From positions 124,001-188,000 of IMG/VR virus record IMGVR_UViG_3300027844_001828: a DNA stretch of 64,000 nucleotides. One strand, 5' to 3'. How positions within the stretch are numbered: the first letter of the stretch is position 1; each line of letters opens with the position of its first letter. A program made the translations under genes and the position numbers. A model generated the notes under the pieces. The model saw nothing but the letters and a program-made list of their open reading frames with translations, was not told the DNA's origin and made no database searches. Below are positions 14,313 to 37,949 of this stretch, in pieces.

Positions 14313-14726
14313 TTGAAATGGAAGTGTAACGTTCCGAGAGAGACTTTTGAGATTCAATTCGGAGATATCAATCTTGAAGTTTTTAGAACGAATCACATCC
14401 CTGACTCATCTGTCGATTGGACAACAGCTTTCGCGATCTATGGCGTATTGATTAATGGAAGAGTTTTGCATCCAGTGGATACACAATTTAATCCTAATTT
14501 AATTAATTATTACTATAACAACTATAATATTGAACATATTTTTCACGACGTTCAATTTTTTCCAGGAGCGGTTCATGCCCCTCTTGAAGATTTGAAGACG
14601 TTGCCAGATGACATTAAAGCAAAGATGTCACTTGTTCATTATTCTGATAATTATGAGGAACAAGACATCACTGGATTTTACGGATGGACCAAGCAAGGAG
14701 TTAGCTACGTGTTTGAGAAGGATTAG
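14313..14726 (+). pseudogene. C-terminal half of an MBL-fold metallo-hydrolase (5'-truncated)
   Basis: TNHIPD, DTQF, IFHDVQ, VHAPLEDL, LVHYSD motifs; no N-terminal HxHxDH in ORF or upstream; TTG start. Confidence 0.6.
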
Positions 14727-15928
14727 CCTCTGGTTAATTCTTCCACTTCACCCTTAAGATCTTCTTTGGTAACAGACATGTCGCATGCAAGCCACATGTC
14801 AATGAAATCACTTTCGGCATAATTGTATGAGACATATCCATATCCGTCATTACCCCAACGGGAGCCCCATGAGTTCTTGAACTTGAATAGTTTCTTTTTC
14901 TCGTCGTATCCAACGACACAAACTGCATGGCCACCAATTGATTTCTCACCAGGATTCCTATCTGGGACAATTCCATCCCTGTTAGTATAGAAAATTCCAT
15001 AATAGACGCGCATTCCAATAATTACTGGTCCGCATTCTTTTAAGGCGATCTTTAAGTCATCAATATTGGCGATTCTTTCATAAGACTTGATTCTTCCCCA
15101 TCTAGCAATCAAGTGAGCCCATGACTCTGGCTCACCGACTTCAACATCGCTGTATGGCCACGCTTCTTCAGTTGGGACTCCAATCTTGCTTAATACTTTC
15201 ATAGCGACTCTAATAGACGTTCCTTCACTATTAGGCCATCTATCAATTTTCTTGCAGTTGTAATAAATCCATTGTTCAGAAAGATCGTAATGGGTTTTCT
15301 CTCTTTGATCCCTTTTACCGGCGGCGACTTCATCAACGTGCTCTTTTTGCTCTTGCCATTCTTTCATGGATGCCGCCGCGAATGCTACACAGCTACCGAG
15401 TTTTCCTTGAGACTTGACTGGTGACATTTCATTCTCGTAATCATATCCGTTAATATTTTGGCTGGTTCCGAATTCGAATACATAATCTCTATCATCCTTT
15501 TCATCAAATTGAAGGTTCAAAGGAAAGTCCATGTTTAATTCCATTGGAGCATCGGAGCTTGAATAGCTGCTGCTTGAATAGCTAACCCAACTTGAACATG
15601 AAGATGAAGAGGATGATTCGACAAATTCATCTGGTGGGTTATCAGAGTCTTCTTTATATCTTGCGATTCTCCATAATTTATCTGCTGTTATTTGGGTATC
15701 TACATAACCCATTCCGCCCTGTGCAAGAAGAGCGACAATTGCCTCTTTCCATAATTGCGCCTCAGCATTAGATATTAGTATCCCACCAATATTAAGCATT
15801 TCATAATTGAACACTATCTTACCCTCATCCTCAAGATTTTGGATCACCAGAAGGATCTCTTCGTCAGTAGCGGCCTGATCGACTGTTGTGTTCTCATCGG
15901 CTAACAAGGCCATTGTGTCAAGTATCAT
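14723..15928 (-). CDS. papain-like (C1A) cysteine peptidase with unknown N-terminal domain and Ser-rich linker
   Basis: SQGKLGSCVAFA (catalytic Cys), GGHAVCVVGYD (His), KNSWGSRWG.DGYG (Asn). Confidence 0.9.
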   Translation of the reverse strand: MILDTMALLADENTTVDQAATDEEILLVIQNLEDEGKIVFNYEMLNIGGILISNAEAQLWKEAIVALLAQGGMGYVDTQITADKLWRIARYKEDSDNPPDEFVESSSSSSCSSWVSYSSSSYSSSDAPMELNMDFPLNLQFDEKDDRDYVFEFGTSQNINGYDYENEMSPVKSQGKLGSCVAFAAASMKEWQEQKEHVDEVAAGKRDQREKTHYDLSEQWIYYNCKKIDRWPNSEGTSIRVAMKVLSKIGVPTEEAWPYSDVEVGEPESWAHLIARWGRIKSYERIANIDDLKIALKECGPVIIGMRVYYGIFYTNRDGIVPDRNPGEKSIGGHAVCVVGYDEKKKLFKFKNSWGSRWGNDGYGYVSYNYAESDFIDMWLACDMSVTKEDLKGEVEELTRG

Positions 15929-16082: not shown

Positions 16083-16256
16083 ATGCCAGAACAAGCGGAG
16101 TTCGATTTCGGTGAGGCCAGGTATAGGATTGTTGGAGTAGTTCTAAAAAAGAACGACAAGACAATGTATGTCGAAGCCACATTGCCAGAAGATTTTGGCG
16201 GCAAGACAGTCAAGATGAAGAGGCATATCGTTAAGCATAACGTTGTCATTGTATGA
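16083..16256 (+). CDS. small hypothetical protein (57 aa; not in ORF track)
   Basis: AGGAGAG RBS, ATG 16083, TGA overlapping next ATG (ATGA). Confidence 0.6.
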   Translation: MPEQAEFDFGEARYRIVGVVLKKNDKTMYVEATLPEDFGGKTVKMKRHIVKHNVVIV

Positions 16257-16696
16257 ACTTGTATGAGATCCATGACTACTGTGAAGAGCCATGGTCAAAT
16301 AAAGTGCGTTCTTACTGGAAATTCATAAGTGGAGAAGTTTGCCATGTCCTGACCGGGAAAACATATGGTAAAATATTTCTGCTACCATTGAAGCTTGATG
16401 GTGTCACTCATCATGGGCTACTATTTGAAAGACCAATAATTTTGCCAAAAGAGAGAAATATACTTTGGCATGAAAGGGGCCATGTCGTTGTTGGAAAGCA
16501 AGTTAGCTCGACTATGGATGAGTATTTCGCCGATGAATGGGCGATCAATGAGTGTCTTGAGAGAGGTTTTAATTTGATTGCTAAAGAAATAATATTGCGC
16601 TGTAAACACTGGTTATCAGTTGATAATCTACCCGTAGAATATAAAGATTCTGGAAGAATGATCGTTAAAAAATTCTCACAATATTTGACTGTATGA
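16253..16696 (+). CDS. HExxH zincin-like metallopeptidase-domain protein
   Basis: LWHERGHV followed by EYFADEWA. Confidence 0.5.
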   Translation: MNLYEIHDYCEEPWSNKVRSYWKFISGEVCHVLTGKTYGKIFLLPLKLDGVTHHGLLFERPIILPKERNILWHERGHVVVGKQVSSTMDEYFADEWAINECLERGFNLIAKEIILRCKHWLSVDNLPVEYKDSGRMIVKKFSQYLTV

Positions 16697-16754
16697 AAAA
16701 TGCATGTATAGTATGTTGTCCAAAGAACTAAATACTTAAAACACGGTTAATACT

Positions 16755-17384
16755 ATGACCAAGAAACCTTTATCCAGCAGAAGATGTCTCGTCCTTAACG
16801 CTTCATGGTTTCCTATAGCCATCGAGCCTCTTGTGAGATCTTTTCGTAAAATCATAAATGGCCACGCCTCAATTATTTATGAAGAAGAGTATGAAGGCAG
16901 TGCCTACTACCAGAACTTTTCTTTCGACGAATGGTTGGTTAAAGGTGTGGGTCCAGACAAGCCCTTCACCAGCACCAGACACTTAGATATTGAGCTTCCA
17001 GAAATCATTCAGAAGCCATATAGCAAGTTTCACGTGCAAAAGCTTCCTTTGCGGGCGAAAAATATTTTTGCCAGAGATGGATGGAAATGTTGGTATTGTG
17101 GAGAGAGAGGTAATCTCACCATGGACCACATTTATCCTAAAAGCAAAGGCGGGAAGGGCGGATGGAAGAATCTTATCGCTGCATGTAAGCCATGCAACAA
17201 TAAGAAGGGAGATATTTTTGCCGAGGAATTCTGCAAGTCAATAGACTGCCCTGTTCCCACACCAATTAATGCGTCATCCTATCCTTGGCTCAAAGATCTT
17301 GGAAAGAGCTATCCAAAATCCTGGGACAAATGGTTGACGGATCACGGAATAGGTCTCAACACCCATAGTGGAGATAAAAAATGA
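16755..17384 (+). CDS. HNH endonuclease (McrA-like)
   Basis: IFARDGWKCWYCG, TMDHIYPKSKGG, WKNLIAACKPCNNKKG; promoter TTGACT-N16-TATAGT at 16685-16712. Confidence 0.9.
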   Translation: MTKKPLSSRRCLVLNASWFPIAIEPLVRSFRKIINGHASIIYEEEYEGSAYYQNFSFDEWLVKGVGPDKPFTSTRHLDIELPEIIQKPYSKFHVQKLPLRAKNIFARDGWKCWYCGERGNLTMDHIYPKSKGGKGGWKNLIAACKPCNNKKGDIFAEEFCKSIDCPVPTPINASSYPWLKDLGKSYPKSWDKWLTDHGIGLNTHSGDKK

Positions 17385-17890
17385 CTTGCAATGATTGTAG
17401 GAATGAAATAAACGAACACCCCTTCCATATATTGAAATGTATAGTTGGGAATCTATTGGGGGATTTATTCTTGTGTCCCGGATGTTTTTTCATAAGAACC
17501 GCCGGTGAGGCAGAAATCATTGGATCTATGGGCGATGACATCATTGTATACAATGAGGGTATGAGCGCTATCGCGAAAGAGTTTTACGAGGTGCCATGCC
17601 CGAATTGTAGCACCAGCCTTAATGATATTAACACTAACGGTCTCTTCGGGTGTGAAGAATGTTATGTTAATTTTTGTGAAATGATAAACATTGCAGAAGC
17701 GAAGGGCTGTCAAAAGATTAAAAAAGACAAGCCCAAGAACATTGATAACAATTTTGAGGGCAACAAGGATGAGGCCCGCAAAAGGGTCTTGAAACAACAG
17801 CTTAAGCAGGCTGAAGAAAAAGAAAATTATGAGAAGTGCGCCGAGATAAGAGACGAATTAGCAAAAATTGATCAAGAGGGAAAACAATGA
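17381..17890 (+). CDS. mcsA: McsA-like protein (CxxC zinc motifs + C-terminal UVR domain)
   Basis: CNDC, CPGC, CPNC, GCEECY; LKQQLKQAEEKENYEKCAEIRDEL; adjacent to McsB-like gene. Confidence 0.8.
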   Translation: MTCNDCRNEINEHPFHILKCIVGNLLGDLFLCPGCFFIRTAGEAEIIGSMGDDIIVYNEGMSAIAKEFYEVPCPNCSTSLNDINTNGLFGCEECYVNFCEMINIAEAKGCQKIKKDKPKNIDNNFEGNKDEARKRVLKQQLKQAEEKENYEKCAEIRDELAKIDQEGKQ

Positions 17891-18945
17891 TTAAGGGAAT
17901 AAATGTTGATAAGCTTTTGAAGGGCGTCCCTATATGGTTGAGAAACGACTCAACTGTCAAGGAAAAATCCATAGTTCTACATAGAAATATTAAGGGGATA
18001 AAGTTCCCTCACATGGCTAGCGAGAAAGAACTCCAATCAGTTTGCGCCATGGTCGCAAAAAGAATGATGGGATTGGAAGAGTTCAATGCTTGGGAATTTG
18101 ATTTGGTTTCGTCAATAAAGAAATTAAATCGGTATATTTTGTATGAGAACAAAGTCGCAGATGAGGCTATCATACCAGTTGGAACTGATATGAATGAGCT
18201 TCCAATGGCGCTCTTTGTTAACGAAGACGGATCTCAGTCGGTATTCGTCAACTCACAAGACCATATTGAGGTGCGAGTCAAAAGCGACAAGTTGGGACTT
18301 CAAGAGTTGTTGGCGAGAGGTCACTCAATTCTTGAGAGCTTGGGATTCGATTATGCAAAGGTCGATCCATTTGGTTATGTAACAGCAAGCCCGGCTTTGA
18401 TGACCCTTGGCATGGAAGCGCAGATATTCACGCACATTCCTGGGATAATTATATCAGAAAGGAACGAAGACTTGGAAAATTTGTTGGAAAACAATAAATT
18501 AGTCGCTTCAGGTTTTTTCGGGCACAATACTCATTTCACTTGCAACTTCTATACTTTTGCAAACCAGCATATAGCAATGAGATCAGAAGAAGAGATTGCC
18601 AATACCTTAGTAGGCGTTTCGAAAAGAATTGAGGCTCTTGAAGAAGAGTGCAGGGAGGAATATGACATCGAAGATCTTAAGGACATAGTCGCTCGATCAT
18701 GGGGAACATTGAATTATGCCAATAAGGTAGACTTAATGGAATCGATAGTCGGGCTCAGTCATTTACTTATGGGCACGGAGTTAGGTCTTTTGAAAAACGT
18801 TTCAAAAGAAAAAACAAAACAAGCCTTGTCAGATGTCTTTCATTATAAAATATTAAAGCGGCATAAATGTCCACCAGACAATGTTGATTTTATTCGAGCG
18901 AAGGGGATCAAGAAAACCTTAAATGGAAAGAGGGAAGCGAATTGA
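17887..18945 (+). CDS. mcsB: McsB-like ATP:guanido phosphotransferase fold, catalytic residues degenerate
   Basis: LHRNIKGIKFP, FVNSQDHIE, GYVTASP, THIPG, ANQ...SEEEI, RSWGTL collinear with McsB; NEED, Cys and ATP-binding Arg residues replaced. Confidence 0.8.
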   Translation: MIKGINVDKLLKGVPIWLRNDSTVKEKSIVLHRNIKGIKFPHMASEKELQSVCAMVAKRMMGLEEFNAWEFDLVSSIKKLNRYILYENKVADEAIIPVGTDMNELPMALFVNEDGSQSVFVNSQDHIEVRVKSDKLGLQELLARGHSILESLGFDYAKVDPFGYVTASPALMTLGMEAQIFTHIPGIIISERNEDLENLLENNKLVASGFFGHNTHFTCNFYTFANQHIAMRSEEEIANTLVGVSKRIEALEEECREEYDIEDLKDIVARSWGTLNYANKVDLMESIVGLSHLLMGTELGLLKNVSKEKTKQALSDVFHYKILKRHKCPPDNVDFIRAKGIKKTLNGKREAN

Positions 18946-20042
18946 GCGAGACTACGACTACCACCAGAAAGGCGAGAGCTAAAAAATCAACCGGACCTAT
19001 TGATATGAATACATCAATTGATAAGATCGTTCCATTGTTTAAGAGCAAGGAACCAAAGGCAGCTATATTTATGCATCAGACCCCAGACCCAGACGCTATT
19101 GGATCAGCAGTGGGTCTCCAATATCTCCTTAAGCATAAATACAAGGTCGAAAGCGATATATTTTATGCTGGCGAGGTTTCGCATAGACAGAATCAAACAT
19201 TGATGAATGTATTGTCATTTTCATTCTATGGACCAGATCATTATGGGAAAAATAAAAAATCATATGACGCAGGGATCTGTGTTGATTGCAACCCGTCGAA
19301 TGTATTTATTGAGGGCGTCGATGACAGCACTATTGACTTGGTCATTGATCACCACAAAATAGAAACATCAAATAACAGTGTTGTGTATGATGTTAGGAAT
19401 TGCGGATCATGTGCCACTATCATTGCTGATTTAATGAGAGAGATAGATTGTCTCCCGAAAGGCGACGAAGGAAAGACTGTAGCTACCGCTATGATCGTTG
19501 GGATGCGAACAGACACAAATGATTTATTGTCGGCAAATATGACAGACCTTGATTTCGACGCCTACAAAAACATATTAGCTCTTGCAGACGGTCAAAAGAT
19601 CACAATGATTGTGAATTACCCCAAGGCATCTTATTACTTCGAACTTCTCAGTAAGGTGATTGCAGAGAGTACAATAAAGAATACAACCTACATAGCATCT
19701 GTTGGATTGATTTCCGAGGCTAAACGCGATGTTCTTCCATCTATTGCTGACGAAATTGTCAGAATGGAAGGAATCTCAACCTCAATCATATTTGGCATAG
19801 TGAACGATAGGATATCTGTTAGTGTAAGAAGTGAAGACGTAACACTTGATGTGAACGCTTTTTGCAAGAAGATATTTGGAGATGAGTTCTCAGGTGGAAA
19901 ATATGGGTCTGGTGGAGCAAGCATTCCACTTGGATTCTTTGGAGGGATAGCTTCTGAACCGGATGCTGTAAAAGACAAGACGGTAGATGCTATCAAAACA
20001 AAATTAACACATATCATTGAGAAAGAAGTCACAAGTGAGTAA
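18942..20042 (+). CDS. DHH/DHHA1 family phosphoesterase
   Basis: HQTPDPDAIGS, ICVD, VIDHH, GSCATI, DT.D, GGK.GSGG. Confidence 0.88.
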   Translation: MSETTTTTRKARAKKSTGPIDMNTSIDKIVPLFKSKEPKAAIFMHQTPDPDAIGSAVGLQYLLKHKYKVESDIFYAGEVSHRQNQTLMNVLSFSFYGPDHYGKNKKSYDAGICVDCNPSNVFIEGVDDSTIDLVIDHHKIETSNNSVVYDVRNCGSCATIIADLMREIDCLPKGDEGKTVATAMIVGMRTDTNDLLSANMTDLDFDAYKNILALADGQKITMIVNYPKASYYFELLSKVIAESTIKNTTYIASVGLISEAKRDVLPSIADEIVRMEGISTSIIFGIVNDRISVSVRSEDVTLDVNAFCKKIFGDEFSGGKYGSGGASIPLGFFGGIASEPDAVKDKTVDAIKTKLTHIIEKEVTSE

Positions 20043-20044
20043 CA

Positions 20045-20344
20045 ATGGCGAATTATTTTAAAACGAAAAGACTAAAGAAGCATATAGCAACACTTCATAA
20101 TAAACGTATCATTCATACTGATCACCTCGGAGTTCCAGGTGTAGATGCTGATAGATTTGCTTCTTATGTAATGACTAAGATTAGACCCGATGACATCGAC
20201 GATTTGACAGACGCAACAATAGCATTTATTTCAAATGTGAGAATGAATAAATCATTTGAAGATATAAGGCATAAAGCTATTGTTGCCAAGTTGTCGGAAG
20301 TTTCAGTTGAAATAGATTTAACAACCACTACAAAAAAGGCGTAG
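20045..20344 (+). CDS. hypothetical protein
   Basis: ORF tightly packed between DHH and nrdJ. Confidence 0.65.
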   Translation: MANYFKTKRLKKHIATLHNKRIIHTDHLGVPGVDADRFASYVMTKIRPDDIDDLTDATIAFISNVRMNKSFEDIRHKAIVAKLSEVSVEIDLTTTTKKA

Positions 20345-20351
20345 AAGGATT

Positions 20352-22922
20352 ATGGAGAGACACAAGTATTCTTACGATGAAGTCATTGAAAAAAGCACAG
20401 AGTATTTTAATGGCGACGATTTGGCAGCATCAACATGGGCTAATAAATATGCCCTAAGAGATTCAGACGGGAATTATTATGAAAACACTCCAACTCAGAT
20501 GTTTTCACGCATGTCCGGTGAGTTTATTAGAATTGAGGATAAAATAAACGAAAAAGCCGTTATCAAAAAGCATGGAAAAAAGTTGTCAAAATACTATCGA
20601 GAAAGGACCAAGTTAACCGAAGAATACATTTACAACATGTTTGATGGATTCAAGTACGTTGTTCCTCAAGGGTCTATCATGTCCATGCTTGGTAATGAAT
20701 TTCAAATTGGATCATTGTCAAATTGCATCGTTATTGAAGAGTTGTTTGATAGCTATGGTGGCATTTGTTACGCAGATCAACAGTTAGTTCAATTGATGAA
20801 GAGACGTTGCGGTGTTGGTCTTGATATTAGTCCATTAAGACCAGAAGGGGAAAACGTTAATAACGCTGCTAAGACATCCACTGGTGCGATATCTTTTATG
20901 GAACGATTCAGTGAAACTACGAGAGAGGTGGCACAATCGGGTCGAAGGGGAGCACTTATGTTGTCGATGGATGGACGCCATCCAAACGTTGATAGTTTCG
21001 CGACGATCAAGAATGATGACACAAAGGTCACTGGCGCGAATATCTCAATTAAGTTGATGGACGATTTTATGAGAGCGGTAGAAAATGATGGTGAATACAA
21101 GTTGCAATGGCCAGTCGAGTCTTCAGATCCAACAGTCACAAGAACTGTAAAGGCTAAAGAACTTTGGGAGACGATTATTAGTTCCGCGCATCTTCGTGCA
21201 GAGCCGGGGTTGATCTTCTGGGATCGCCAGCATTTCTATTCCACTTCATCCTTGTATCCGCAATACAAAAACATTTCTACTAATCCATGCGCTGAAATCG
21301 CAATGGGTAATGACTCTTGTAGATTAATGGCGCTCGTACTTTTTGGATTCATTGACAATCCATTTACGAATAGAGCCAGGTTCAACTACGATAAGTTTTA
21401 TGAATACGTCTATGAATCACAAAGGTTGATGGACGACGTTGTTGAATTGGAGCTTGAACATGTAAAAAGGATCATTGAAAAGATCAAGTCAGATCCTGAG
21501 CCGGATCATATTAAGCAAGTAGAGATCGCGACTTGGGAAAGGCTTTATGAGTCAGGTAAAAACGGAAGACGCACTGGATTAGGGTTCACTGCACTTGCTG
21601 ACACGCTTGCTGCGTTGGGTATCAAGTTCGATTCGAAAAAGGCCCTCAAGGTTACTGATGAGATCATGAGGGTTAAGTTGAAAGCCGAGTGGGATTCATC
21701 AATTGATATGGCGATTGAAAGAGGTCAATTTGTTGGGTTCGATAAAGAGATTGAAGATCAGTCAGAATTCATCCACATGGTTAAAAAAGAGTTCCCTGAG
21801 ATTTATGCACGTAATATGGAATATGGAAGGCGTAATATTTCAATCAGCACATTAGCTCCCTGTGGAAGCGTGTCAATCGAAGCGCAAACTTCGTCTGGTG
21901 GGGAAGCCCTCTTCGCATTGAAGTTCGGTCGTAGAAGAAAGGTCAACCCAAATGATGAAGAGGTCAGAGTTGACTTTGTGGATGAACAGGGCGATAGCTG
22001 GATGTATTTTGAAGTTGAGCATGAAAGATTAAAGCAATGGTCTGAAGTCACCGGGAATAAGAATTATGATGAGTCACCATATTTTGGATGTACCGCTCAT
22101 GATATTGATTGGAACTACAGGGTTAAACTCCAGGGTGTGATTCAGAAGTACACAACACATTCTGTTTCATCAACAATCAACTTGCCTAATGATGTTTCAT
22201 TGGAAGAGGTGTCAGATATTTATATGGCCTCATGGAAAGAGGGATTGAAAGGAATCACTATATATAGAGATGGTTGCCGTAGTGGAGTGTTGATTTTGAG
22301 CGAGACAGACGACGATGGTAGACCTGTTAACATTGTTTCCTCTCAAGCGCCAAAGAGGCCGGAATTCTTACCATGTGATATCCATGTCACAAACATCAAA
22401 GGGGTCAAGTGGGTGTTCCTTATCGGAATGTTAAATGAAAGACCCTATGAAGTGTTTGGCGGCAAATTTGATGACATCATCATTCCTGCCAAATATATAG
22501 GGGGAAGGACTGATCCTAATGTTAAATGGAAAGCAACTGACTTGACAGCAGCTATTTTTAAAAATGATGGTCATTACGATCTTAATCTTTCAGACCCGAA
22601 AAAAGTAGTTAACGATCATTCTGAATCAACTTTGATAGAAGACATCGCGTCCCATTTCAGTGTTGATTTGGGAACTCCGACAAGATTGATTTCAATGCTC
22701 TTACGTCATGGCGTTTCAATAAATAACATTTGTGAGCAGATCAAAAAGATTCCGCAGGAAGACACAATGTTGACCTTTGAAAAAGGTGTTGGCAGAGTGT
22801 TGAAGAAGTACATCGACGATAATACAAAGGCCAAGGGGACATGTCCTGAGTGCGAACGCCATTTGATTTATGAAGGCGGTTGTGTGAAGTGTTCAAGTTG
22901 TCATTGGTCAAAATGCGAGTAG
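20352..22922 (+). CDS. nrdJ: adenosylcobalamin-dependent (class II) ribonucleotide reductase
   Basis: SLSNC, RRCGVG, GRRGALM, STNPCAE, DSCRL, GRRTGLG, TLAPCGS, SSTINLP, KGITIYRDG; C-terminal zinc ribbon CPEC...CSSC. Confidence 0.93.
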   Translation: MERHKYSYDEVIEKSTEYFNGDDLAASTWANKYALRDSDGNYYENTPTQMFSRMSGEFIRIEDKINEKAVIKKHGKKLSKYYRERTKLTEEYIYNMFDGFKYVVPQGSIMSMLGNEFQIGSLSNCIVIEELFDSYGGICYADQQLVQLMKRRCGVGLDISPLRPEGENVNNAAKTSTGAISFMERFSETTREVAQSGRRGALMLSMDGRHPNVDSFATIKNDDTKVTGANISIKLMDDFMRAVENDGEYKLQWPVESSDPTVTRTVKAKELWETIISSAHLRAEPGLIFWDRQHFYSTSSLYPQYKNISTNPCAEIAMGNDSCRLMALVLFGFIDNPFTNRARFNYDKFYEYVYESQRLMDDVVELELEHVKRIIEKIKSDPEPDHIKQVEIATWERLYESGKNGRRTGLGFTALADTLAALGIKFDSKKALKVTDEIMRVKLKAEWDSSIDMAIERGQFVGFDKEIEDQSEFIHMVKKEFPEIYARNMEYGRRNISISTLAPCGSVSIEAQTSSGGEALFALKFGRRRKVNPNDEEVRVDFVDEQGDSWMYFEVEHERLKQWSEVTGNKNYDESPYFGCTAHDIDWNYRVKLQGVIQKYTTHSVSSTINLPNDVSLEEVSDIYMASWKEGLKGITIYRDGCRSGVLILSETDDDGRPVNIVSSQAPKRPEFLPCDIHVTNIKGVKWVFLIGMLNERPYEVFGGKFDDIIIPAKYIGGRTDPNVKWKATDLTAAIFKNDGHYDLNLSDPKKVVNDHSESTLIEDIASHFSVDLGTPTRLISMLLRHGVSINNICEQIKKIPQEDTMLTFEKGVGRVLKKYIDDNTKAKGTCPECERHLIYEGGCVKCSSCHWSKCE

Positions 22923-23102: not shown

Positions 23103-23714
23103 ATGTACTGTTTTGATATTGGGCCGATTGGCGTGACGAAGTTCGGCGAGAGAAATTTTGATCCGAGCTTTGGGCCGACGAAGATCCTTGATTTTACCCC
23201 TCTTGAATTTTCTACTCGTGTATCTTCCATGTTGGATTCTGGCCCGTCTATACCTGTTATAGATGGCTATGCTGATTTCTGCAAGCTCATTCCGTTGCCG
23301 AATTTTACCGCTGCAAGAACTGGTTCTTTGCCAATCACGATTGAGAATTATCAATACCTTCGTTCTGGATATTCTGCAAGAACAGAGAAAGAGCTTCCGG
23401 TATTGTCACGCTGGTTTGAACTTCCCCTTGGGAAGCCAAAGGCAGAGTACTTGATGATTGTGGTCTACAATTGGGAACAACTCAAGGCAGAGCATGAGGT
23501 TGACAATGTATTTGATGTACCGTTTGAATTCGACTATAAGTGGGGGATCGTGGCGATTCTTGGGCAAATGCACCCCAATGAAGAACCCATGAAACCAATC
23601 ACGATGCTCAGGAATTCCCTTGGAAAAGAAGAGGGGGGATCAGGAGTCCCGATAGATCGAGAAAGATATGATAAGTCAGTTGAATTTTGGAAAATCAACG
23701 CTACAGTAAAATGA
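23103..23714 (+). CDS. DUF3228-like protein
   Basis: DGYADFCK, LRSGYSARTEKELPVLSRWF, EPMKPITMLRN.LG.EEGGSGVP.D motifs recalled for this family. Confidence 0.75.
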   Translation: MYCFDIGPIGVTKFGERNFDPSFGPTKILDFTPLEFSTRVSSMLDSGPSIPVIDGYADFCKLIPLPNFTAARTGSLPITIENYQYLRSGYSARTEKELPVLSRWFELPLGKPKAEYLMIVVYNWEQLKAEHEVDNVFDVPFEFDYKWGIVAILGQMHPNEEPMKPITMLRNSLGKEEGGSGVPIDRERYDKSVEFWKINATVK

Positions 23715-26091: not shown

Positions 26092-26835
26092 TTGAACTAC
26101 GAAAATACCATAATATGTGACGAATGTGAGAACGTTATTCCAAATCTCCCTGACGATTCAGTGGATATGATTGTAACGTCCCCGCCATACAACGTCAACC
26201 TTGGAAAGAACAAGTATAACAGTCATGAGTATGATCAATACGATGATAACAAAAAGCACGATTCATATATTACTTGGTTGTGTGGAATATTAAATTCGTT
26301 CGGGCCAAAGTTAAAAATAGGCGGCAGAGTCTGCATCAATATCAATGATGGCAAGAATGGTCGAATTCCAACATGCTCAGATTTGATACAAGGCTTGAAT
26401 TACAAACCATTTGCACACATAGTTTGGGACAAGGGACATACCAGCAACCGGACAGCTTGGGGCAGTTGGTTGTCACCATCAATGCCAAGTTTCCCAACTC
26501 CTTTTGAAAGGATACTTGTATTTTCCAAAGGTGAGTATAAGTTACAGTACAAAGGGGAAACTGACTTAGAACGAGAGGAATTCATTCAGTGGGCGAATTC
26601 TATCTGGCGCTTCAAGCCAGAGAACAGAAAGAATCATCCAGCCCCTTTCCCATTAGAGCTTCCCAAAAGATTAATCAAAATGCTTTCTTGGAAAGACGCC
26701 TTTATTGTAGATCCATTTAACGGATCTGGAACCACTACGTTAGCCTGTAAAATGTTTGGACGCAGATACTTGGGGATAGACCTTTCCGAAGAGTACTGCA
26801 CAGACGCAAGAGATAGGATAGATGAATATGATTGA
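26092..26835 (+). CDS. beta-class N4-C/N6-A DNA methyltransferase
   Basis: VTSPPY before HPAPFP and VDPFNGSGTT. Confidence 0.9.
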   Translation: MNYENTIICDECENVIPNLPDDSVDMIVTSPPYNVNLGKNKYNSHEYDQYDDNKKHDSYITWLCGILNSFGPKLKIGGRVCININDGKNGRIPTCSDLIQGLNYKPFAHIVWDKGHTSNRTAWGSWLSPSMPSFPTPFERILVFSKGEYKLQYKGETDLEREEFIQWANSIWRFKPENRKNHPAPFPLELPKRLIKMLSWKDAFIVDPFNGSGTTTLACKMFGRRYLGIDLSEEYCTDARDRIDEYD

Positions 26836-27750: not shown

Positions 27751-27830
27751 AATATCTCTTCAACACAGCTTGAAAACCAGGTTTGGCGAGCTATATTCTA
27801 ACCTTAACCAAACAACAGGAGAGCATCAAA

Positions 27831-29780
27831 ATGAGTCTTACCCCCACACAATTGACTGAAGCGAGTGAACTTATTACAAAACTTAGGTTGTGGAAAAACG
27901 CCTATTACATTGATAACAAGCCAGTTGTGTCAGATCAGGTATATGATGGCGGCGAAATGCGCCTCAAGCAGTTGATTCCTGATCACCCGTTCTTCGATGA
28001 GGTTGGATCGACAGTAGATGGGTTCAAGCCTATCGACTATGTTGCCGCAGGCGGTGAAAAGATGCTCAGTCTTGAAAAAGCCTATACAGAGCCGGAAGTG
28101 ACAAAATTCGCCGGGAAGGACGCATGGGTTCCAATGGTCAAGCTTGACGGAACTTCGCTCCGAGCAATCTACAGCGGCGGTAAGATCGAACTTGCCCACA
28201 CAAGAGGTAATGGAACTGTTGGTGATGACGTTACCAACAACTTCTACTTTGTGAAAGGATCGACTCCCAAGAAATACAAATGGGACACCTTTGAAGTCAA
28301 AGGCGAAGTTTGCATGACCTTTGATGATTTCGATGCGGTTAACATCGAAAGAGAAAGGGATGGGGAAGAAGTCTTCAAAAACCCCCGGAATGCCGCCAGT
28401 GGGTCTCTTAAGCAATTGGACATGTTCGAGACCGCAAAAAGAAAATTGCAGTTCGTCGCCTACGCAATAAAAGTAGAGGGGCACAGTTTCAAGTCGAAGA
28501 CTGAAATGCTTGATTCCTTGGAAGAAATGGGCTTCGTCACGGCAAGACTCAAGATTAAATTCAATACGATTGCTGATGTCATTGATAAAGTGACGAAGAT
28601 GCGTGAAAAAATTCCGATTCCGATTGATGGTATCGTCTTCGCTCTTGATGCCGTATCAGTGAGAGAAAAGAAAGGCTATACTGGTCATCACCCGAAATAC
28701 GAAATGGCTTACAAGTTCGCATCCGAAAGCGGGATCACCAAGTTGCTCGATTACGAATGGAACGTCACGAGAACTCGTCGTATTGTTCCCGTTGGTCTCA
28801 TTGAAGACATCGAACTCTCAGGGGCTGTTTGCTCAAGAGTCACGCTTCATAATGCGAAATGGGTCCATGACAAACATATTGCTATTGGCGAAGAGATTGT
28901 TATTGAAAGAAGCGGCGATGTCATTCCTCACTTTGTCAAAACTGTGAGAGCTACAAAAGACATTCCCTGGTCCTCGAAAGACAATCTTCCGACCAAATGC
29001 CCTGCCTGTAGAACCACACTTGTCAGAGTAGGCAATGTTGACCTCGGATGTCCTAACGAACATTGCTCTGGTGCTGCTTACGAGGCGATTATGCACTATG
29101 TAGGCAAGCCAGTTGTTAATATCAAGGCGGTAGGTGACAAATTGATCGCCCAACTCATCAAAGCGAATCTTATTGAAGACCCCGCAGACCTCTTCACATT
29201 AACCAAGAGTGACCTTATGACCCTTGATCGAATGGGTGATAAGAAGGCTGAAAAGACACTCGAAGCGATTAATAAGGCAAGGACTCAAGACGTGCAAACA
29301 TTTCTCAGGTCACTTGGTGTTGAATTACTTGGAAAGGATGTGTCTGAAAAGATCGCAGACTTCGTTGATCTTGATACATTAACTGTGACACGTGATTTGA
29401 CGCATATTGATGGAATAGCTGAAACGACAGCAACAGCGGTGACAGAAGGTCTTGACAAATCCAGACCACTTGCAGATAAGTTGCGTCAATATGTCAAGAT
29501 CACAACTGGTAAAGCTGTTGCACTTGGTAATTCCCTCGAAGGAAGCGCATTTTGTGTCAGCGGGAGCGTCGAATTTGATCTCGACGGTGAAAATTATTCA
29601 GAACGTAGTCAAATTCAGAACTTGATCAAGTCATACGGTGGTAAGGTCTCCAGTTCTGTATCTGGCAGAACGAGTTACCTCGTTGCTGGCCCAGGGTCTG
29701 GAAGCAAGTCAACAAAAGCAGATGACCTCGGTGTTACAATCATCGATGGTAATAAATTGGCAGAATTGATTGAAAATTGA
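27831..29780 (+). CDS. ligA: NAD+-dependent DNA ligase
   Basis: KLDG adenylation motif, TRGNG..GDDVT, FKNPRNAASGSLKQ, IDGIV, Zn finger, HhH, BRCT; promoter TTGAAA-N16-TATATT at 27770-27797. Confidence 0.95.
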   Translation: MSLTPTQLTEASELITKLRLWKNAYYIDNKPVVSDQVYDGGEMRLKQLIPDHPFFDEVGSTVDGFKPIDYVAAGGEKMLSLEKAYTEPEVTKFAGKDAWVPMVKLDGTSLRAIYSGGKIELAHTRGNGTVGDDVTNNFYFVKGSTPKKYKWDTFEVKGEVCMTFDDFDAVNIERERDGEEVFKNPRNAASGSLKQLDMFETAKRKLQFVAYAIKVEGHSFKSKTEMLDSLEEMGFVTARLKIKFNTIADVIDKVTKMREKIPIPIDGIVFALDAVSVREKKGYTGHHPKYEMAYKFASESGITKLLDYEWNVTRTRRIVPVGLIEDIELSGAVCSRVTLHNAKWVHDKHIAIGEEIVIERSGDVIPHFVKTVRATKDIPWSSKDNLPTKCPACRTTLVRVGNVDLGCPNEHCSGAAYEAIMHYVGKPVVNIKAVGDKLIAQLIKANLIEDPADLFTLTKSDLMTLDRMGDKKAEKTLEAINKARTQDVQTFLRSLGVELLGKDVSEKIADFVDLDTLTVTRDLTHIDGIAETTATAVTEGLDKSRPLADKLRQYVKITTGKAVALGNSLEGSAFCVSGSVEFDLDGENYSERSQIQNLIKSYGGKVSSSVSGRTSYLVAGPGSGSKSTKADDLGVTIIDGNKLAELIEN

Positions 29781-30081: not shown

Positions 30082-31251
30082 ATGGAAATTGACATGATAA
30101 AATCAATGTTAGATTCAGATTTATACAAGTTTTCAATGCAAGCAGCAGTTCTTCACAATTTCCCCGGAGTAATTGTTGAATACCGTTTCAAATGCAGAAG
30201 TGTATGGGCGGATCTCGCCCAGCATAGGGATGAAATCGAGAGACAAATAGGTTTCCTTGGCAACCTTTACCTCACTCCCGACGAAGAGAAACAGGTTCGC
30301 GAGAAAATACCTTTCCTCAAGCCAGACTATGTTGATTTCCTTTCTGAATTCAGATTCAACCCTGATTTCGTGAAAGTTGAAACGATTTCTGATACTGAGA
30401 TTGATATTATTGTTCGCGGCCCATGGCTCCAAACAATTCCTTTCGAGGTCCCAATCCTTTCTATTGTTGAAGCAGTAGCATGCAAAGACTTAATGACTGA
30501 TGAAGCCTTGAGCATTGGCAGAAGAAACTTGGCTGACAAGATTGAAATCATCAAGGCCGTTGGTCCAGAATTCAAATTAGCAGATTTCGGGACTCGTCGC
30601 AGAGCGAGTTTCGAGCAGCAACGTTATGTTGTAGAGACACTTACGAATGAAGTTCCAAACAACTTTGTTGGGACAAGCAATGTCTCCCTCGCTTTAGATA
30701 ACAATATTAAACCAATCGGAACGATGGCGCATGAGTGGATTCAAGCAATGCAAGGTCTCACTTGGTTGCTCAATAGCCAGAAAATGGCTTTAGATATATG
30801 GATGAAAGAATATCGTGGTCAGCTTGGTATTGCTTTGTCCGACTGTCTTGGATACGCCGCTTTCCTTAGAGACTTCGATTTCCTCTTTTCGAAGAGCTAT
30901 GACGGCTGTCGCCATGACTCTGGCGATCCGTTTGAATGGGGTGAGAAGTTGATTAGACACTATGAATCAATGAGCATCGATCCGAAAACAAAGACAGCAG
31001 TATTCAGCGATGGTCTCGACATGATATTGGCCGTGAGGTTGTTTGAAAGGTTCCATGGGAGAATCAAAGTCTCTTTCGGCATTGGCACCCACTTGACCAA
31101 CGACCTTGGATTTGATCCTGTTCAGATCGTTTTGAAGATGGTCGAGTGTAATGGTCAACCGGTAGCAAAGATAAGCGACTCGTCTGGCAAGGGTATGTGT
31201 AATAACGCCGTATATCTTACCCATCTTAAAAACATGTTTGAGGTGGATTGA
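30082..31251 (+). CDS. pncB: nicotinate phosphoribosyltransferase
   Basis: LDSDLYKFSM, ADFGTRRR, GTSN, GTMAHEW, RHDSGDP, FSDGL, FGIGT, KISDS.GK. Confidence 0.93.
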   Translation: MEIDMIKSMLDSDLYKFSMQAAVLHNFPGVIVEYRFKCRSVWADLAQHRDEIERQIGFLGNLYLTPDEEKQVREKIPFLKPDYVDFLSEFRFNPDFVKVETISDTEIDIIVRGPWLQTIPFEVPILSIVEAVACKDLMTDEALSIGRRNLADKIEIIKAVGPEFKLADFGTRRRASFEQQRYVVETLTNEVPNNFVGTSNVSLALDNNIKPIGTMAHEWIQAMQGLTWLLNSQKMALDIWMKEYRGQLGIALSDCLGYAAFLRDFDFLFSKSYDGCRHDSGDPFEWGEKLIRHYESMSIDPKTKTAVFSDGLDMILAVRLFERFHGRIKVSFGIGTHLTNDLGFDPVQIVLKMVECNGQPVAKISDSSGKGMCNNAVYLTHLKNMFEVD

Positions 31252-37394: not shown

Positions 37395-37949
37395 ATGAGT
37401 GAGGAATCAGCGAAAATATTGACCCTAGAGGATTATCATTATCATCTATTCAACAAGGAATTCAATCGCGAAAGTACTGGTGAGGCGATGTCATTTATTA
37501 TTACCAGGAATTTGATGAAAGAAAAGAAGCCTGAAGTTTTGAAAATGGTTATCACTTCTCCAGGCGGAGATGTCAGTTCTGCTTTTGCTCTAATTGATAC
37601 AATGAAGGGATCAAAAATACCCATATACACTTATGGATTGGGAGTCGTCGCTAGTTGTGGCGTGTTAACGTTTATTGCCGGAGAAAAAGGGCATCGATAC
37701 ATTACAAAGAACACACAGATACTTTCTCATCAATATCAATGGGGAAGCTATGACAAATATCATGAGTTAATGTCAATCGTGGGTGAATTCAAAAATATCC
37801 ACAAAAGGTTCATTCGACATTACAAGAAATGCACTGGCTTATCGAAAAAGGAGATTAAGAAGTATCTTCTTCCCGCTAAGGACGTTTGGTTGACAGCACA
37901 AGACGCTGTTGATCTCGGCATGGCAGATGAAATCGTTGATTTTTATTAA
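37395..37949 (+). CDS. clpP: ATP-dependent Clp protease proteolytic subunit
   Basis: ITSPGG, VASCG (Ser), LSHQ (His), KDVWLTAQDAVDLGMAD (Asp). Confidence 0.92.
   Translation: MSEESAKILTLEDYHYHLFNKEFNRESTGEAMSFIITRNLMKEKKPEVLKMVITSPGGDVSSAFALIDTMKGSKIPIYTYGLGVVASCGVLTFIAGEKGHRYITKNTQILSHQYQWGSYDKYHELMSIVGEFKNIHKRFIRHYKKCTGLSKKEIKKYLLPAKDVWLTAQDAVDLGMADEIVDFY

What the first reader, a model, noticed from the sequence alone, without database searches (positions are those of the whole stretch)
17381..18945. McsA paired with a catalytically dead McsB: candidate pseudokinase decoy of the host ClpCP/arginine-phosphorylation system
Seen against canonical McsB (established motifs): SSRIRLARN becomes EKSIVLHRN, NEEDHIR becomes NSQDHIE, SCPTN becomes ASPAL, LRASV becomes MEAQI, and VRGIYGEG becomes ASGFFGHN. 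Both catalytic Glu, the Cys and most ATP-binding Arg are lost, yet the ORF is full length with the C-terminal domain (RSWGTL) and an intact McsA partner. Inference: maintained as a non-catalytic dominant-negative or ClpC adaptor that shields phage proteins from pArg tagging or redirects degradation. The phage also encodes its own ClpP (37395-37949).
Basis: partly seen in the sequence, partly recalled or inferred. Interest (0 to 1): 0.75.

Follow-up and report, generated by a model that had tools for sequence, protein, structure and literature searches.

The report
Phage McsA plus kinase-dead McsB pair
An uncultivated marine jumbo phage carries a coupled gene pair copied from the bacterial McsA/McsB "mark proteins for destruction" kinase. 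The kinase half has lost every catalytic residue yet is conserved under strong selection in related phages, so it most likely works as a non-enzymatic binding module, probably in protein quality control.

Summary
Window 17381-17890 encodes a McsA homologue and 17887-18945 a full-length McsB homologue, with overlapping stop and start codons. In the McsB homologue the ATP-binding arginines, the NEEDH glutamates, the catalytic Cys, the TN of CPTN and the GEG glutamate are all replaced.

It is not a decaying gene. At least 13 phage-type homologues (20-85% pairwise identity, median 33%) are all intact, all dead at the same sites and all preceded by a McsA-like gene. For the closest relative pairs dN/dS is about 0.06-0.09.

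The pArg receptor pocket, the autophosphorylation arginines and the McsA activation loop are also gone, so every known phospho-arginine function has been lost.

The 235.6-kb marine phage also encodes:
- a ClpC-like unfoldase with no M-domain but a retained LGF loop (outside the window);
- a ClpP-family peptidase;
- an FtsH-like protease.

It has no CtsR and no YwlE-family (LMWPc) phosphatase. The host is unknown.

The best reading is a pArg-independent scaffold or adaptor for Clp-type proteolysis. This role is inferred, not shown.

Dead McsB orthologues also occur in bacterial ctsR-mcsA-mcsB-clpC operons (Dialister). I found no report of phage McsA/McsB or of McsB pseudokinases in the papers searched.

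The parts
17381..17890 (+). McsA-like gene (169 aa), translationally coupled to the next gene
   Evidence: NCBIfam McsA NF053706 E 1.1e-9. PDB McsA 8wtb_B E 5.6e-7. Homologues lie upstream of every phage-type dead McsB whose upstream DNA is visible.
17387..17485 (+). McsA-like first zinc finger (C3, C6 ... C32, C35)
   Evidence: C32 and C35 are invariant and C3 and C6 nearly invariant in alignment A2.
17597..17662 (+). McsA-like second zinc finger Z2 (C73, C76, C91, C94; GxFGCxxCY core), the McsB-binding element in B. subtilis
   Evidence: All four Cys are invariant in A2. They align to C81/C84/C99/C102 of 8wtb_B. The role of Z2 is described in PMC11046695.
17756..17884 (+). McsA-like C-terminal UVR-type coiled coil (ENYEKCAEIRDEL)
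   Evidence: Pfam UVR E 0.033 in this protein, stronger in homologues. The motif is conserved in A2. Model pLDDT is 85-93 here.
17887..18945 (+). Catalytically dead McsB homologue (352 aa): phosphotransferase-fold domain about aa 1-255, dimerisation domain about aa 256-346
   Evidence: Sequence and family matches. AlphaFold model pLDDT 95, TM 0.86 to McsB structures over the full length.
17962..17988 (+). EKSIVLHRN, degenerate form of SSRIRLARN (both ATP-site Arg replaced by S28 and V30; R33 and N34 kept)
18250..18270 (+). NSQDHIE, degenerate form of NEEDHIR (E->S, E->Q, R->E)
   Evidence: NEEDH is described as the catalytic motif in PMC11046695.
18385..18426 (+). ASPAL ... MEAQI, degenerate forms of SCPTN and LRASV (catalytic Cys->Ser, TN->AL, Arg->Glu). 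The phage clade has the new conserved motif xPA[IL]M.
18505..18528 (+). ASGFFGHN, degenerate form of VRGxYGEG (Arg->Ser, Glu->His)
18694..18711 (+). RSWGTL, retained motif at the start of the C-terminal dimerisation domain
   Evidence: R270 and G273 are nearly invariant across dead and active homologues.
16755..17384 (+). HNH endonuclease, overlaps the McsA-like start by 4 nt. Context gene; the same position is occupied in relatives L006 and L013.
   Evidence: Pfam HNH E 2.4e-12. Synteny.
18942..20042 (+). DHH/DHHA1 phosphoesterase, overlaps the McsB-like stop by 4 nt. Context gene; relatives have an AAA_28 P-loop gene in this position.
   Evidence: Pfam DHH E 1.3e-16. Relatives.
20352..22922 (+). 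Ribonucleotide reductase, the conserved downstream neighbour of the pair in related phage contigs
   Evidence: tblastn to B12-dependent RNRs of phages at 43-45% identity. RNR lies downstream in L006, L008, L013 and L027.
37395..37949 (+). ClpP-family serine peptidase (184 aa), a candidate proteolytic partner. The link to the pair is inferred only.
   Evidence: Pfam CLP_protease E 2.2e-29. Ser/His/Asp positions are kept in the alignment to ClpP 7eko_A. It is the only ClpP-family gene in the phage genome. NCBIfam also gives weaker hits to head-maturation proteases.

Best explanation
The locus encodes a phage version of the McsA-McsB module that has become a pseudoenzyme.

Shown:
- The two genes are translationally coupled.
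- The McsB homologue keeps the complete McsB fold, including the dimerisation domain.
- It lacks all residues needed to bind ATP and transfer phosphate.
- It also lacks the phospho-arginine receptor pocket and the autophosphorylation arginines.
- The McsA homologue keeps both zinc fingers and the coiled coil but lacks the kinase-activating L3 loop.
- The pair is conserved as a unit under strong purifying selection in a clade of related uncultivated phages.

Inferred:
- The two proteins form a McsA*-McsB* complex, like the canonical rod-shaped heterotetramer.
- That complex acts purely by binding, as a phospho-arginine-independent scaffold, adaptor or regulator in protein quality control.
- Its most likely partner is Clp-type proteolysis: either the phage's own ClpC-like unfoldase (no M-domain, second pArg site lost, ClpP-docking LGF loop kept) with the ClpP-family peptidase, or the host ClpC.

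The confidence given is for the whole statement. For 'selected, non-catalytic McsA/McsB-derived pair' alone I would give about 0.9. For the Clp-linked adaptor or regulator role I would give about 0.4.
For: - Homology and fold.
- Loss of catalytic residues. It is shared by P0001-P0009, P0018 and L024-L027. The scaffold residues R33, N34, N122, D125, H126, P169, G209, G212 and R337 stay (near-)invariant.
- Relaxed active site. Former catalytic positions have ordinary variability inside the clade (mean entropy 1.85 against a protein-wide median of 1.91). In active McsBs the same positions carry the canonical residue in 110-136 of 141 sequences.
- Monophyly. The nine clade members and P0018 form a supported group of ten (local support 98; FastTree, no bootstrap).
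- Pairing. A McsA-like gene lies upstream in 13 of 13 phage-type loci where upstream DNA is visible, usually overlapping the McsB-like gene.
- Selection. McsB* L024-L025 gives dN 0.091, dS 1.03, ratio 0.09. L008-L026 gives about 0.06. McsA* L024-L025 gives about 0.08.
- pArg features lost. S285->L/F, R337->V/I, and R190/R194->E/D. Their roles are described in PMC8370763 and bioRxiv 10.1101/2025.11.26.690658.
- McsA* changes. It lacks the L3 loop and R115.
- Phage proteolysis genes. A ClpC-like unfoldase at G000:C1:47334-49535 is 44% identical to a Dialister ClpC over aa 90-417. Its M-domain is deleted, GTEH is replaced by DACH, and LGF is kept. A ClpP-family peptidase and an FtsH-like protease lie in the window.
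- Dead McsB orthologues sit in bacterial ctsR-mcsA-mcsB-clpC operons, so a kinase-independent role linked to ClpC is plausible in cells too.
Against: - No direct evidence links the pair to any Clp component.
- The ClpC-like gene is about 92 kb away from the pair, and the ClpP-like gene about 18 kb away.
- Co-occurrence of the pair with ClpC-like or ClpP-like genes could not be tested in relatives because their contigs are short.
- In B. subtilis, McsB's adaptor function and CtsR capture depend on phospho-arginine, which this pair cannot make.
- The phage unfoldase has no M-domain, which is the region adaptors use on ClpC (my own knowledge, not tested here). Pfam found no Clp_N in it.
- The conserved neighbours are nucleotide-metabolism genes (RNR, AAA_28 or DHH), not proteostasis genes.
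- dN/dS comes from relatives, not from the window gene itself. That gene has no close relative, and its population is nearly clonal.
- The ClpP-like gene could be a head-maturation protease.
Confidence: 0.45

Rival explanations
1. Decoy or dominant negative of the host arginine-phosphorylation system. McsB* would heterodimerise with host McsB or titrate host McsA. McsA* would occupy host McsB without activating it. Either way pArg tagging of phage proteins, or pArg-dependent activation of ClpC, would be blocked.
For: - The dimerisation domain and the McsA-binding Z2 finger are retained, while the activating L3 loop is missing.
- Dimerisation is needed for full kinase activity (PMC8370763), and Z2-L3 is essential for activation (PMC11046695).
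- McsB homologues occur in marine-relevant phyla such as Planctomycetota and Verrucomicrobiota, so a host with the system is possible.
- There is precedent for a phage protein that modulates ClpCP: SPO1 Gp53 (PMC6873191).
Against: - The host is unknown.
- McsB* is only 22-30% identical to active McsBs, so mixed dimers are not assured.
- The two phage proteins are co-inherited and translationally coupled, which suggests they bind each other rather than host partners.
- No relative of the phage-type protein carrying its motif was found in 185,579 reference genomes, which would have indicated a recent host origin.
Confidence: 0.2
2. Capture of a host regulator. The McsA*-McsB* complex would bind the host heat-shock repressor CtsR, or another DNA-binding protein, without phosphorylating it. 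That would switch host class III stress genes on or off for the phage's benefit.
For: - Canonical McsAB removes CtsR from its operator as a stoichiometric complex (bioRxiv 10.1101/2025.11.26.690658).
- McsA promotes stoichiometric substrate binding (PMC11046695).
- The phage has no CtsR of its own.
Against: - In the canonical complex CtsR is held through pArg115 of McsA and pArg194 of McsB. Both positions are absent here.
- The host is unknown, and CtsR was found in only 2 of the 14 control genomes searched, Bacillus subtilis and Lactococcus lactis.
Confidence: 0.1
3. A repurposed binding module unrelated to proteolysis. One example would be a regulator or assembly factor for the neighbouring nucleotide-metabolism genes (RNR, AAA_28 kinase-like or DHH phosphoesterase). 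Another would be a sensor of a guanidino or nucleotide ligand in the remodelled pocket.
For: - The order HNH / McsA* / McsB* / AAA_28 or DHH / small ORF / RNR is conserved in the window and in L006, L008, L013 and L027.
- New clade-specific constraints exist in the old pocket: S/T28, A170, I/L171 and the xPA[IL]M motif.
Against: - Gene order in phage early regions is often kept without any functional link.
- Most former active-site positions are variable, which argues against a new defined ligand site.
- No known precedent exists.
Confidence: 0.15
4. A decaying relic of a captured host operon with no function.
For: Every catalytic residue is gone. Scores fall far below the NCBIfam equivalog cut-offs.
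Against: - All 13 phage-type ORFs are intact at 340-359 aa, although pairwise identity goes down to 20%.
- dN/dS is 0.06-0.09.
- Scaffold residues are invariant.
- The model is confident.
- The same sequence is found essentially unchanged in many marine samples from 2017-2024.
Confidence: 0.02
5. Still an enzyme, with a different catalytic solution or a different phosphoryl or nucleotidyl chemistry.
For: N122, D125 and H126 of the NEEDH region and the glycine-rich loop are retained.
Against: - All ATP-phosphate-binding arginines are lost; two sites are mostly acidic or Gln.
- The replaced positions differ from phage to phage.
Confidence: 0.05

Closest known systems
McsB protein-arginine kinase (B. 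subtilis, G. stearothermophilus, S. aureus; PDB 6fh1, 6tv6, 8gqd, 8wtb)
   Same: - Same two-domain fold: phosphagen-kinase-type domain plus C-terminal dimerisation domain, TM 0.85-0.86 over the full length.
- Same gene partner (mcsA) immediately upstream.
- Scaffold motifs are kept: RN, N..DH, FGYLT, H.P, G..G, RSxGxL.
   Different: - All ATP-binding Arg, both NEEDH Glu, Cys167, TN of CPTN and Glu212 are replaced.
- The pArg receptor residues and the R190/R194 sites are lost.
- It scores 141.9 bits against a cut-off of 385.
- It is encoded by a phage, with no ctsR and no adjacent clpC.
McsA, activator of McsB (PDB 8wtb_B; PMC11046695)
   Same: Two CxxC...CxxC zinc fingers, the GxFGCxxCY core of Z2 that contacts McsB, and the C-terminal UVR-like coiled coil.
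   Different: - It lacks the L3 'HxGxxxHxGKxP' loop that is conserved in the three bacterial McsA sequences compared; Z2-L3 is reported as essential for kinase activation.
- It lacks R115.
- The linker is shorter.
- It scores 38 bits against a cut-off of 210.
Kinase-dead McsB orthologues in bacterial ctsR-mcsA-mcsB-clpC operons (Dialister sp. UMGS766, D. succinatiphilus YIT 11850, and metagenomic loci L016 and L038), seen here
   Same: They have lost most of the same catalytic residues (a few positions are retained in individual loci), and most have a McsA-type gene upstream.
   Different: - They are cellular and sit in the canonical operon next to ctsR and a full ClpC.
- They lie outside the supported phage clade in the tree or by best match.
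- Their McsA, where checked (L016 and L015), keeps the L3 loop.
- I found no paper on McsB pseudokinases.
SPO1 Gp53, phage-encoded adaptor-like modulator of B. subtilis ClpCP (PMC6873191)
   Same: A phage protein proposed to act on Clp-dependent proteolysis by binding rather than by catalysis.
   Different: Not identified here as a homologue of the McsA/McsB pair; I know of no homology. It is experimentally shown to bind ClpC, whereas nothing has been tested for the pair described here.
ClpP, ClpS, ClpA and ClpX genes of jumbo phages (survey PMC7824862)
   Same: Jumbo phages are known to carry pieces of the Clp system. Klebsiella RaK2-type phages encode a ClpA-like ATPase 33% identical to this phage's unfoldase.
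   Different: That survey does not mention McsA or McsB (0 occurrences). The BFVD library of viral protein structures has no McsB-like fold at E <= 0.001.

Membership tests
McsB protein-arginine kinase | Phosphagen-kinase-type phosphotransferase domain (PF00217) | tested here: met
   Pfam E 3.7e-20. Foldseek gives McsB chains as the top 12 hits.
McsB protein-arginine kinase | C-terminal helical dimerisation domain (McsB_C) | tested here: met
   The model aligns over about 350 residues to 6tv6/6fh3 at TM 0.86. PF27454 is precomputed for P0001.
McsB protein-arginine kinase | Catalytic and ATP-binding residues (R29, R31, E120/E121, R125, C167, T169/N170, R176, R207, E212 in B. subtilis numbering) | tested here: not met
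   All are replaced, by S28, V30, S123/Q124, E128, S168, A170/L171, E177, S208 and H213.
McsB protein-arginine kinase | Phospho-arginine receptor pocket (S285, R337, D338, R341) and autophosphorylated R190/R194 | tested here: not met
   S285->L, R337->V, R190->E and R194->D. Only D338 and R341 are kept. Their roles are from PMC8370763.
McsB protein-arginine kinase | Score above the curated equivalog cut-off | tested here: not met
   141.9 bits against 385 (NF002194), and 131.4 against 500 (NF053707).
McsB protein-arginine kinase | Arginine kinase activity | not testable with these tools
   Predicted absent from the sequence. A biochemical assay is needed.
McsB protein-arginine kinase | Operon context ctsR-mcsA-mcsB-clpC | tested here: not met
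   mcsA-like is adjacent. No CtsR is present in the phage genome. The ClpC-like gene lies about 92 kb away.
McsA (McsB activator) | Two zinc-coordinating CxxC...CxxC motifs and a UVR-like coiled coil | tested here: met
   C3/C6/C32/C35 and C73/C76/C91/C94 are conserved, and the ENYExxAxxRDE motif is conserved.
McsA (McsB activator) | L3 activation loop after Z2, and R115 | tested here: not met
   The loop motif is present in bacterial McsAs (L020, L016, L015) and absent in all phage-type sequences. R115 falls in a gap.
McsA (McsB activator) | Physical binding to the McsB partner | not testable with these tools
   Inferred from gene coupling and co-conservation only. No complex prediction tool was available.
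Pseudoenzyme (pseudokinase of the phosphagen-kinase fold) | Enzyme fold retained, catalytic residues lost, sequence under purifying selection | tested here: met
   Fold. Loss of residues. dN/dS 0.06-0.09 in the closest clade pairs, with all 13 ORFs intact. Selection was measured in relatives, not in the window copy itself.
ClpC/Clp adaptor or regulator (MecA, McsB, Gp53 type) | Binds a Clp unfoldase and changes its ATPase or degradation activity | not testable with these tools
   Only circumstantial: the phage encodes a ClpC-like unfoldase and a ClpP-like peptidase.

The most novel reading that the evidence does not exclude
A phage-borne degradation system that does not use phospho-arginine. 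A pseudokinase McsB*/McsA* complex would serve as the substrate receptor for a phage-encoded, M-domain-less ClpC-like unfoldase and ClpP. The virus could then choose which host or viral proteins are destroyed without any kinase step. The independently kinase-dead McsBs in Dialister ctsR-mcsA-mcsB-clpC operons would then point to an unrecognised kinase-independent function of the McsAB scaffold in bacteria as well.
Probability: 0.25. Interest if true: 0.8.

Novelty: new variant of a known kind. Interest (0 to 1): 0.65.

Why it matters
McsB is the founding protein-arginine kinase, and its known roles (degradation tagging, CtsR removal, ClpC activation) are all described as phosphorylation-dependent. 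A McsA/McsB pair that has shed every phospho-arginine feature yet is kept under strong selection implies the scaffold has a binding function of its own.

Such pairs occur in a lineage of marine and other environmental phages, and dead McsBs also occur independently in bacterial ctsR operons.

For phage biology this would add a new element to the set of proteostasis genes carried by jumbo phages (ClpP, ClpS, ClpA, ClpX). It may be a new way of taking over host protein turnover.

It is directly testable with recombinant proteins, and Dialister succinatiphilus YIT 11850 is a named strain that carries a cellular counterpart.

Tried and rejected
- Population-level selection test. I laid contigs of four marine runs on window 16253-20344. 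The population is almost clonal, with one difference (17716 G>T). The low word shares reflected low coverage, not divergence, so no pN/pS could be computed.
- Word-index protein search and both IMG/VR scans found only identical copies of the gene. The exhaustive HMMER search was needed to find relatives.
- GenBank phages. There is no DNA match. tblastn gave only about 25%-identity hits on short records named after Listeria or Staphylococcus phages, or on faecal contigs; these look like host-derived mcsB.
- A scan of GTDB reference genomes with the phage-clade motif found no relative.
- Host inference failed. The RNR is nearest to crAss-like and huge phages at 43-45%. The DnaE-type polymerase is only 33-35% identical to many unrelated phages. 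The Atlas only shows that McsB occurs in Chlamydiota, Planctomycetota, Verrucomicrobiota, Spirochaetota and Bacillota.
- The AlphaFold model of McsA* (12-sequence alignment) had pLDDT 67 and pTM 0.30. That is too poor for a fold search, so none was run.
- Co-occurrence of the pair with ClpC-like or ClpP-like genes in relatives could not be tested.
- The neutral-pseudogene and alternative-enzyme readings were considered and rejected.
- Searches of the phage genome for CtsR, a YwlE-type phosphatase, Clp_N, and S77 or S78 prohead proteases found nothing. The S77 control also found nothing anywhere, so that negative carries no weight.
Full report
**What is there.** The window is bases 124001-188000 of a 235,624-bp IMG/VR virus record that CheckV rates 93% complete, so this is a jumbo phage. 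The same sequence is present, essentially unchanged, in many marine and seawater metagenomes from 2017 to 2024. At the finding's coordinates two ORFs lie on the + strand: 17381-17890 (169 aa) and 17887-18945 (352 aa). They belong to a tightly packed block:
- HNH endonuclease, 16755-17384
- the first ORF
- the second ORF
- DHH/DHHA1 phosphoesterase, 18942-20042
- a small ORF
- ribonucleotide reductase, 20352-22922

ATGA stop/start overlaps occur at three consecutive junctions.

**Checking the observation.**
- The 352-aa protein matches the phosphagen-kinase catalytic domain (Pfam PF00217, E 3.7e-20).
- It also matches NCBI's protein-arginine-kinase models (E 2.6e-41), but at 141.9 bits against a cut-off of 385, and solved McsB structures (6fh1, E 7.9e-22).
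- An AlphaFold model built on a 112-sequence alignment is very confident (pLDDT 95, pTM 0.92). It superposes on McsB over its full length, C-terminal dimerisation domain included (TM 0.85-0.86).
- In B. subtilis numbering the changes are: R29 and R31 to S and V, E120/E121 to S/Q, R125 to E, C167 to S, T169/N170 to A/L, R176 to E, R207 to S, and E212 to H.
- C167 and the NEEDH motif are the catalytic elements named in PMC11046695. The roles of the arginines and of the second glutamate come from established knowledge of phosphagen kinases, not from a paper read here.
- The 169-aa protein matches McsA (NCBIfam E 1.1e-9; PDB 8wtb_B E 5.6e-7). It has both CxxC...CxxC zinc fingers and the UVR-like coiled coil.

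**Is it a relic or a maintained gene?**
- The word-index search and the IMG/VR scans found only identical copies.
- The exhaustive HMMER search found nine proteins at E <= 1e-30 (the query's own P0001 plus eight relatives, P0002-P0009, 26-36% identity). A clear gap separates them from ordinary McsBs at about E 1e-27.
- The nine clade members, plus P0018 as sister, form a supported clade.
- A metagenome scan added four more members, L024-L027.
- Every member lacks the same catalytic residues. The scaffold residues R33, N34, N122, D125, H126, P169, G209, G212 and R337 stay (near-)invariant.
- Inside the clade the former catalytic positions are as variable as an average position (mean entropy 1.85 against a median of 1.91). 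The same positions carry the canonical residue in 110-136 of 141 other homologues. That is the pattern expected when catalysis has been abandoned but the fold is still needed.
- A few replaced positions have acquired new constraints: S/T28, A170, I/L171 and the motif xPA[IL]M.
- All 13 ORFs with DNA in hand are intact at 340-359 aa, despite a median pairwise identity of 33%.
- For the two closest pairs, dN/dS is 0.09 (L024-L025: dN 0.091, dS 1.03) and about 0.06 (L008-L026, where dS is near saturation). For the McsA-like gene it is about 0.08.

The caveat is that selection was measured in relatives, because the window's own gene has no close relative and its population is nearly clonal.

**The partner and the context travel with it.**
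- In all 13 phage-type loci where upstream DNA is visible, a McsA-like gene of 165-188 aa (one cut by a contig end) precedes the dead McsB, usually overlapping it.
- All four Z2 cysteines, two Z1 cysteines and the coiled-coil motif are invariant; the other two Z1 cysteines are nearly so.
- The loop after Z2 has the form 'HxGxxxHxGKxP' in the three bacterial McsA sequences compared. PMC11046695 reports it as part of the Z2-L3 element essential for kinase activation. It is absent from every phage-type McsA.
- The order HNH / McsA* / McsB* / AAA_28 (DHH in the window) / small ORF / RNR recurs in L006, L008, L013 and L027. It sits alongside inteins, RtcB, a DNA methylase and a DnaJ-domain protein. 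These contigs therefore come from one phage lineage.
- No relative carrying the phage-clade motif was found in 185,579 reference genomes.
- The BFVD library of viral protein structures has no comparable fold.
- A survey of jumbo-phage genes lists ClpP, ClpS, ClpA and ClpX but not McsA or McsB.

**More than catalysis has been lost.** Canonical McsB binds phospho-arginine in a receptor pocket (S285, R337, D338, R341). It oligomerises and captures CtsR through pArg190/194 of McsB and pArg115 of McsA (PMC8370763; bioRxiv 10.1101/2025.11.26.690658).
- In the window protein S285 is L (F in most of the clade) and R337 is V.
- R190 and R194 are E and D.
- McsA R115 falls in a gap.

The pair has thus lost the means of writing phospho-arginine, the known receptor pocket for reading it, and the known sites that carry it. 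This weakens any model in which it acts through pArg, whether as a pArg sink, a CtsR trap of the canonical kind, or a pArg-dependent ClpC activator.

**The phage has its own proteolysis genes.**
- Outside the window, at G000:C1:47334-49535, lies a 733-aa Hsp100 unfoldase (TIGR ClpA model E 6.3e-144).
- Against the ClpC of a Dialister ctsR operon it is 44% identical over residues 90-417.
- The roughly 60-residue M-domain is missing.
- The second Clp_N repeat reads VDACH where ClpC has VGTEH. The glutamate there is E106, the main pArg-binding determinant (PMC12583610).
- The LGF tripeptide aligns with the LGF of ClpC. From general knowledge of Clp ATPases I read this as the ClpP-docking loop.
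- The D2 Walker B DE is replaced by KK.
- Inside the window are a ClpP-family peptidase (37395-37949) with Ser/His/Asp in place and an FtsH-like AAA+/M41 protein (49502-51475) with HEASH.
- The ClpP-like gene is the only one of its family in the genome. It also gives weaker hits to head-maturation proteases, so its role is not settled.
- The genome has no CtsR and no YwlE-type phosphatase.

**Dead McsBs also exist in cells.** Among the other homologues several lack the catalytic residues and lie on bacterial contigs.
- P0032 sits between a McsA-like gene and clpC.
- L035, identical to a contig of uncultured Dialister sp. UMGS766, and L038 lie in operons with ctsR upstream and clpC downstream; a UVR-type McsA gene was confirmed in L035, while in L038 the intervening ORF gave only a weak OapC match.
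- The orthologue in Dialister succinatiphilus YIT 11850 is also dead.
- Where checked (L016 and L015), their McsA keeps the L3 loop.
- They lie outside the supported phage clade (P0032, P0033 in the tree) or have their best match among active McsBs (L035, L038).

This suggests, though it does not prove, that the McsA-McsB scaffold has a kinase-independent function connected with ClpC and CtsR.

**Most likely mechanism.**
- Shown: a conserved, selected, non-catalytic McsB homologue, genetically coupled to a McsA homologue that keeps its McsB-binding zinc finger.
- Inferred: the two form a complex that works by binding alone. Its most likely field of action is Clp-type proteolysis, either as a phospho-arginine-independent substrate receptor or regulator for the phage's own ClpC-like/ClpP-like pair, or as a modulator of host ClpC.
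- I give about 0.9 to the pseudoenzyme-pair statement, about 0.4 to the Clp-linked role, and 0.45 to the combined statement.
- The decoy or dominant-negative reading (0.2) is not excluded. It depends on a host that has McsB, and that is unknown. It also has to explain why the two phage proteins are co-inherited as a unit.
- Other rivals are capture of CtsR (0.1), a role tied to the conserved nucleotide-metabolism neighbours (0.15), a new enzymatic chemistry (0.05) and neutral decay (0.02).

**Comparison with what is known.** By fold and ancestry the two proteins belong to the McsB and McsA families. As a functional kinase-activator pair they fail the defining tests: catalytic residues, pArg pocket, L3 loop, curated score cut-offs and operon context.
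- The closest functional precedent in phages is SPO1 Gp53, an adaptor-like modulator of ClpCP that I have no evidence is related (PMC6873191).
- The closest genomic precedents are the Clp genes of jumbo phages (PMC7824862).
- None of the literature searches returned a report of phage-encoded McsA/McsB or of McsB pseudokinases. A missing report is not proof of novelty.
- I rate this a new variant of a known kind.

**Verdict.** Interest is 0.65. The finding is a clean, evolutionarily supported pseudoenzyme case in a system where all known functions are thought to need phosphorylation, it has a cellular parallel, and it is directly testable with recombinant proteins. The role is unproven and the host is unknown.

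Noticed in passing
outside the window: G000:C1:47334-49535 (L019:49-2250): The phage encodes a 733-aa ClpC/ClpA-like Hsp100 unfoldase. It has no M-domain. Its D2 Walker B is degenerate (DE->KK) and its D2 Walker A is unusual (GPPGIGKKS). The LGF loop is retained. The second Clp_N repeat reads DACH instead of GTEH.
   Followed up: partly
window 49502-51475 (+): FtsH-like protein: an AAA+ region with Walker A GMTGVGKT plus a peptidase M41 domain with an intact HEASH motif. All scores are far below the FtsH cut-offs.
   Followed up: partly
L035/L040 (uncultured Dialister sp. UMGS766), L041 (Dialister succinatiphilus YIT 11850), L016, L038, L015: Bacterial McsB orthologues lacking the catalytic residues sit in canonical operons with ctsR and/or clpC (L015 instead lies next to an S41 tail-specific protease). 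Kinase-dead McsB therefore seems to have arisen repeatedly in cells.
   Followed up: partly
window 30082-31251 (+) and 35292-37226 (+): A nicotinate phosphoribosyltransferase and a glutamine-dependent NAD synthase. Together they form a phage-encoded NAD+ salvage set like those reported for jumbo phages (PMC11662467 appeared in the literature search).
   Followed up: no
window 32561-33577 (-): A strong match to the Volactin family of actin homologues (PF25216, E 1.9e-74), on the minority strand.
   Followed up: no
window 14723-15928 (-): A papain-family C1 cysteine peptidase (E 7.8e-23) with a serine-rich linker. It lies on the opposite strand, just upstream of the block that holds the pair.
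   Followed up: no
window 19509-19544 (inside the DHH gene): About 36 bases reach 50-60x summed contig depth in three of the four marine runs. The flanks are unrelated and there are 5 mismatches. This is a short segment shared with other, more abundant organisms.
   Followed up: no
window 17716: G>T in one 2024 marine run was the only difference seen across 4.1 kb in four runs. It falls at the third position of codon 112 of the McsA-like gene. The population is nearly clonal across years.
   Followed up: partly
L027:11080-12447 (-); RNR genes in L006, L008, L013, L027: In a relative, a TnpB/IS605-type gene sits directly after the dead McsB. The relatives' RNR genes carry inteins and homing endonucleases, whereas the window's RNR (20352-22922, 856 aa) carries none.
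   Followed up: no
window 23103-23714, 26092-26835, 39576-40613, 27783-29780, 44510-44580: Other accessory genes: DUF3228 (E 7e-60), an N6/N4 DNA methylase, an RNA ligase, an NAD-dependent DNA ligase with BRCT, and a tRNA-Met.
   Followed up: no
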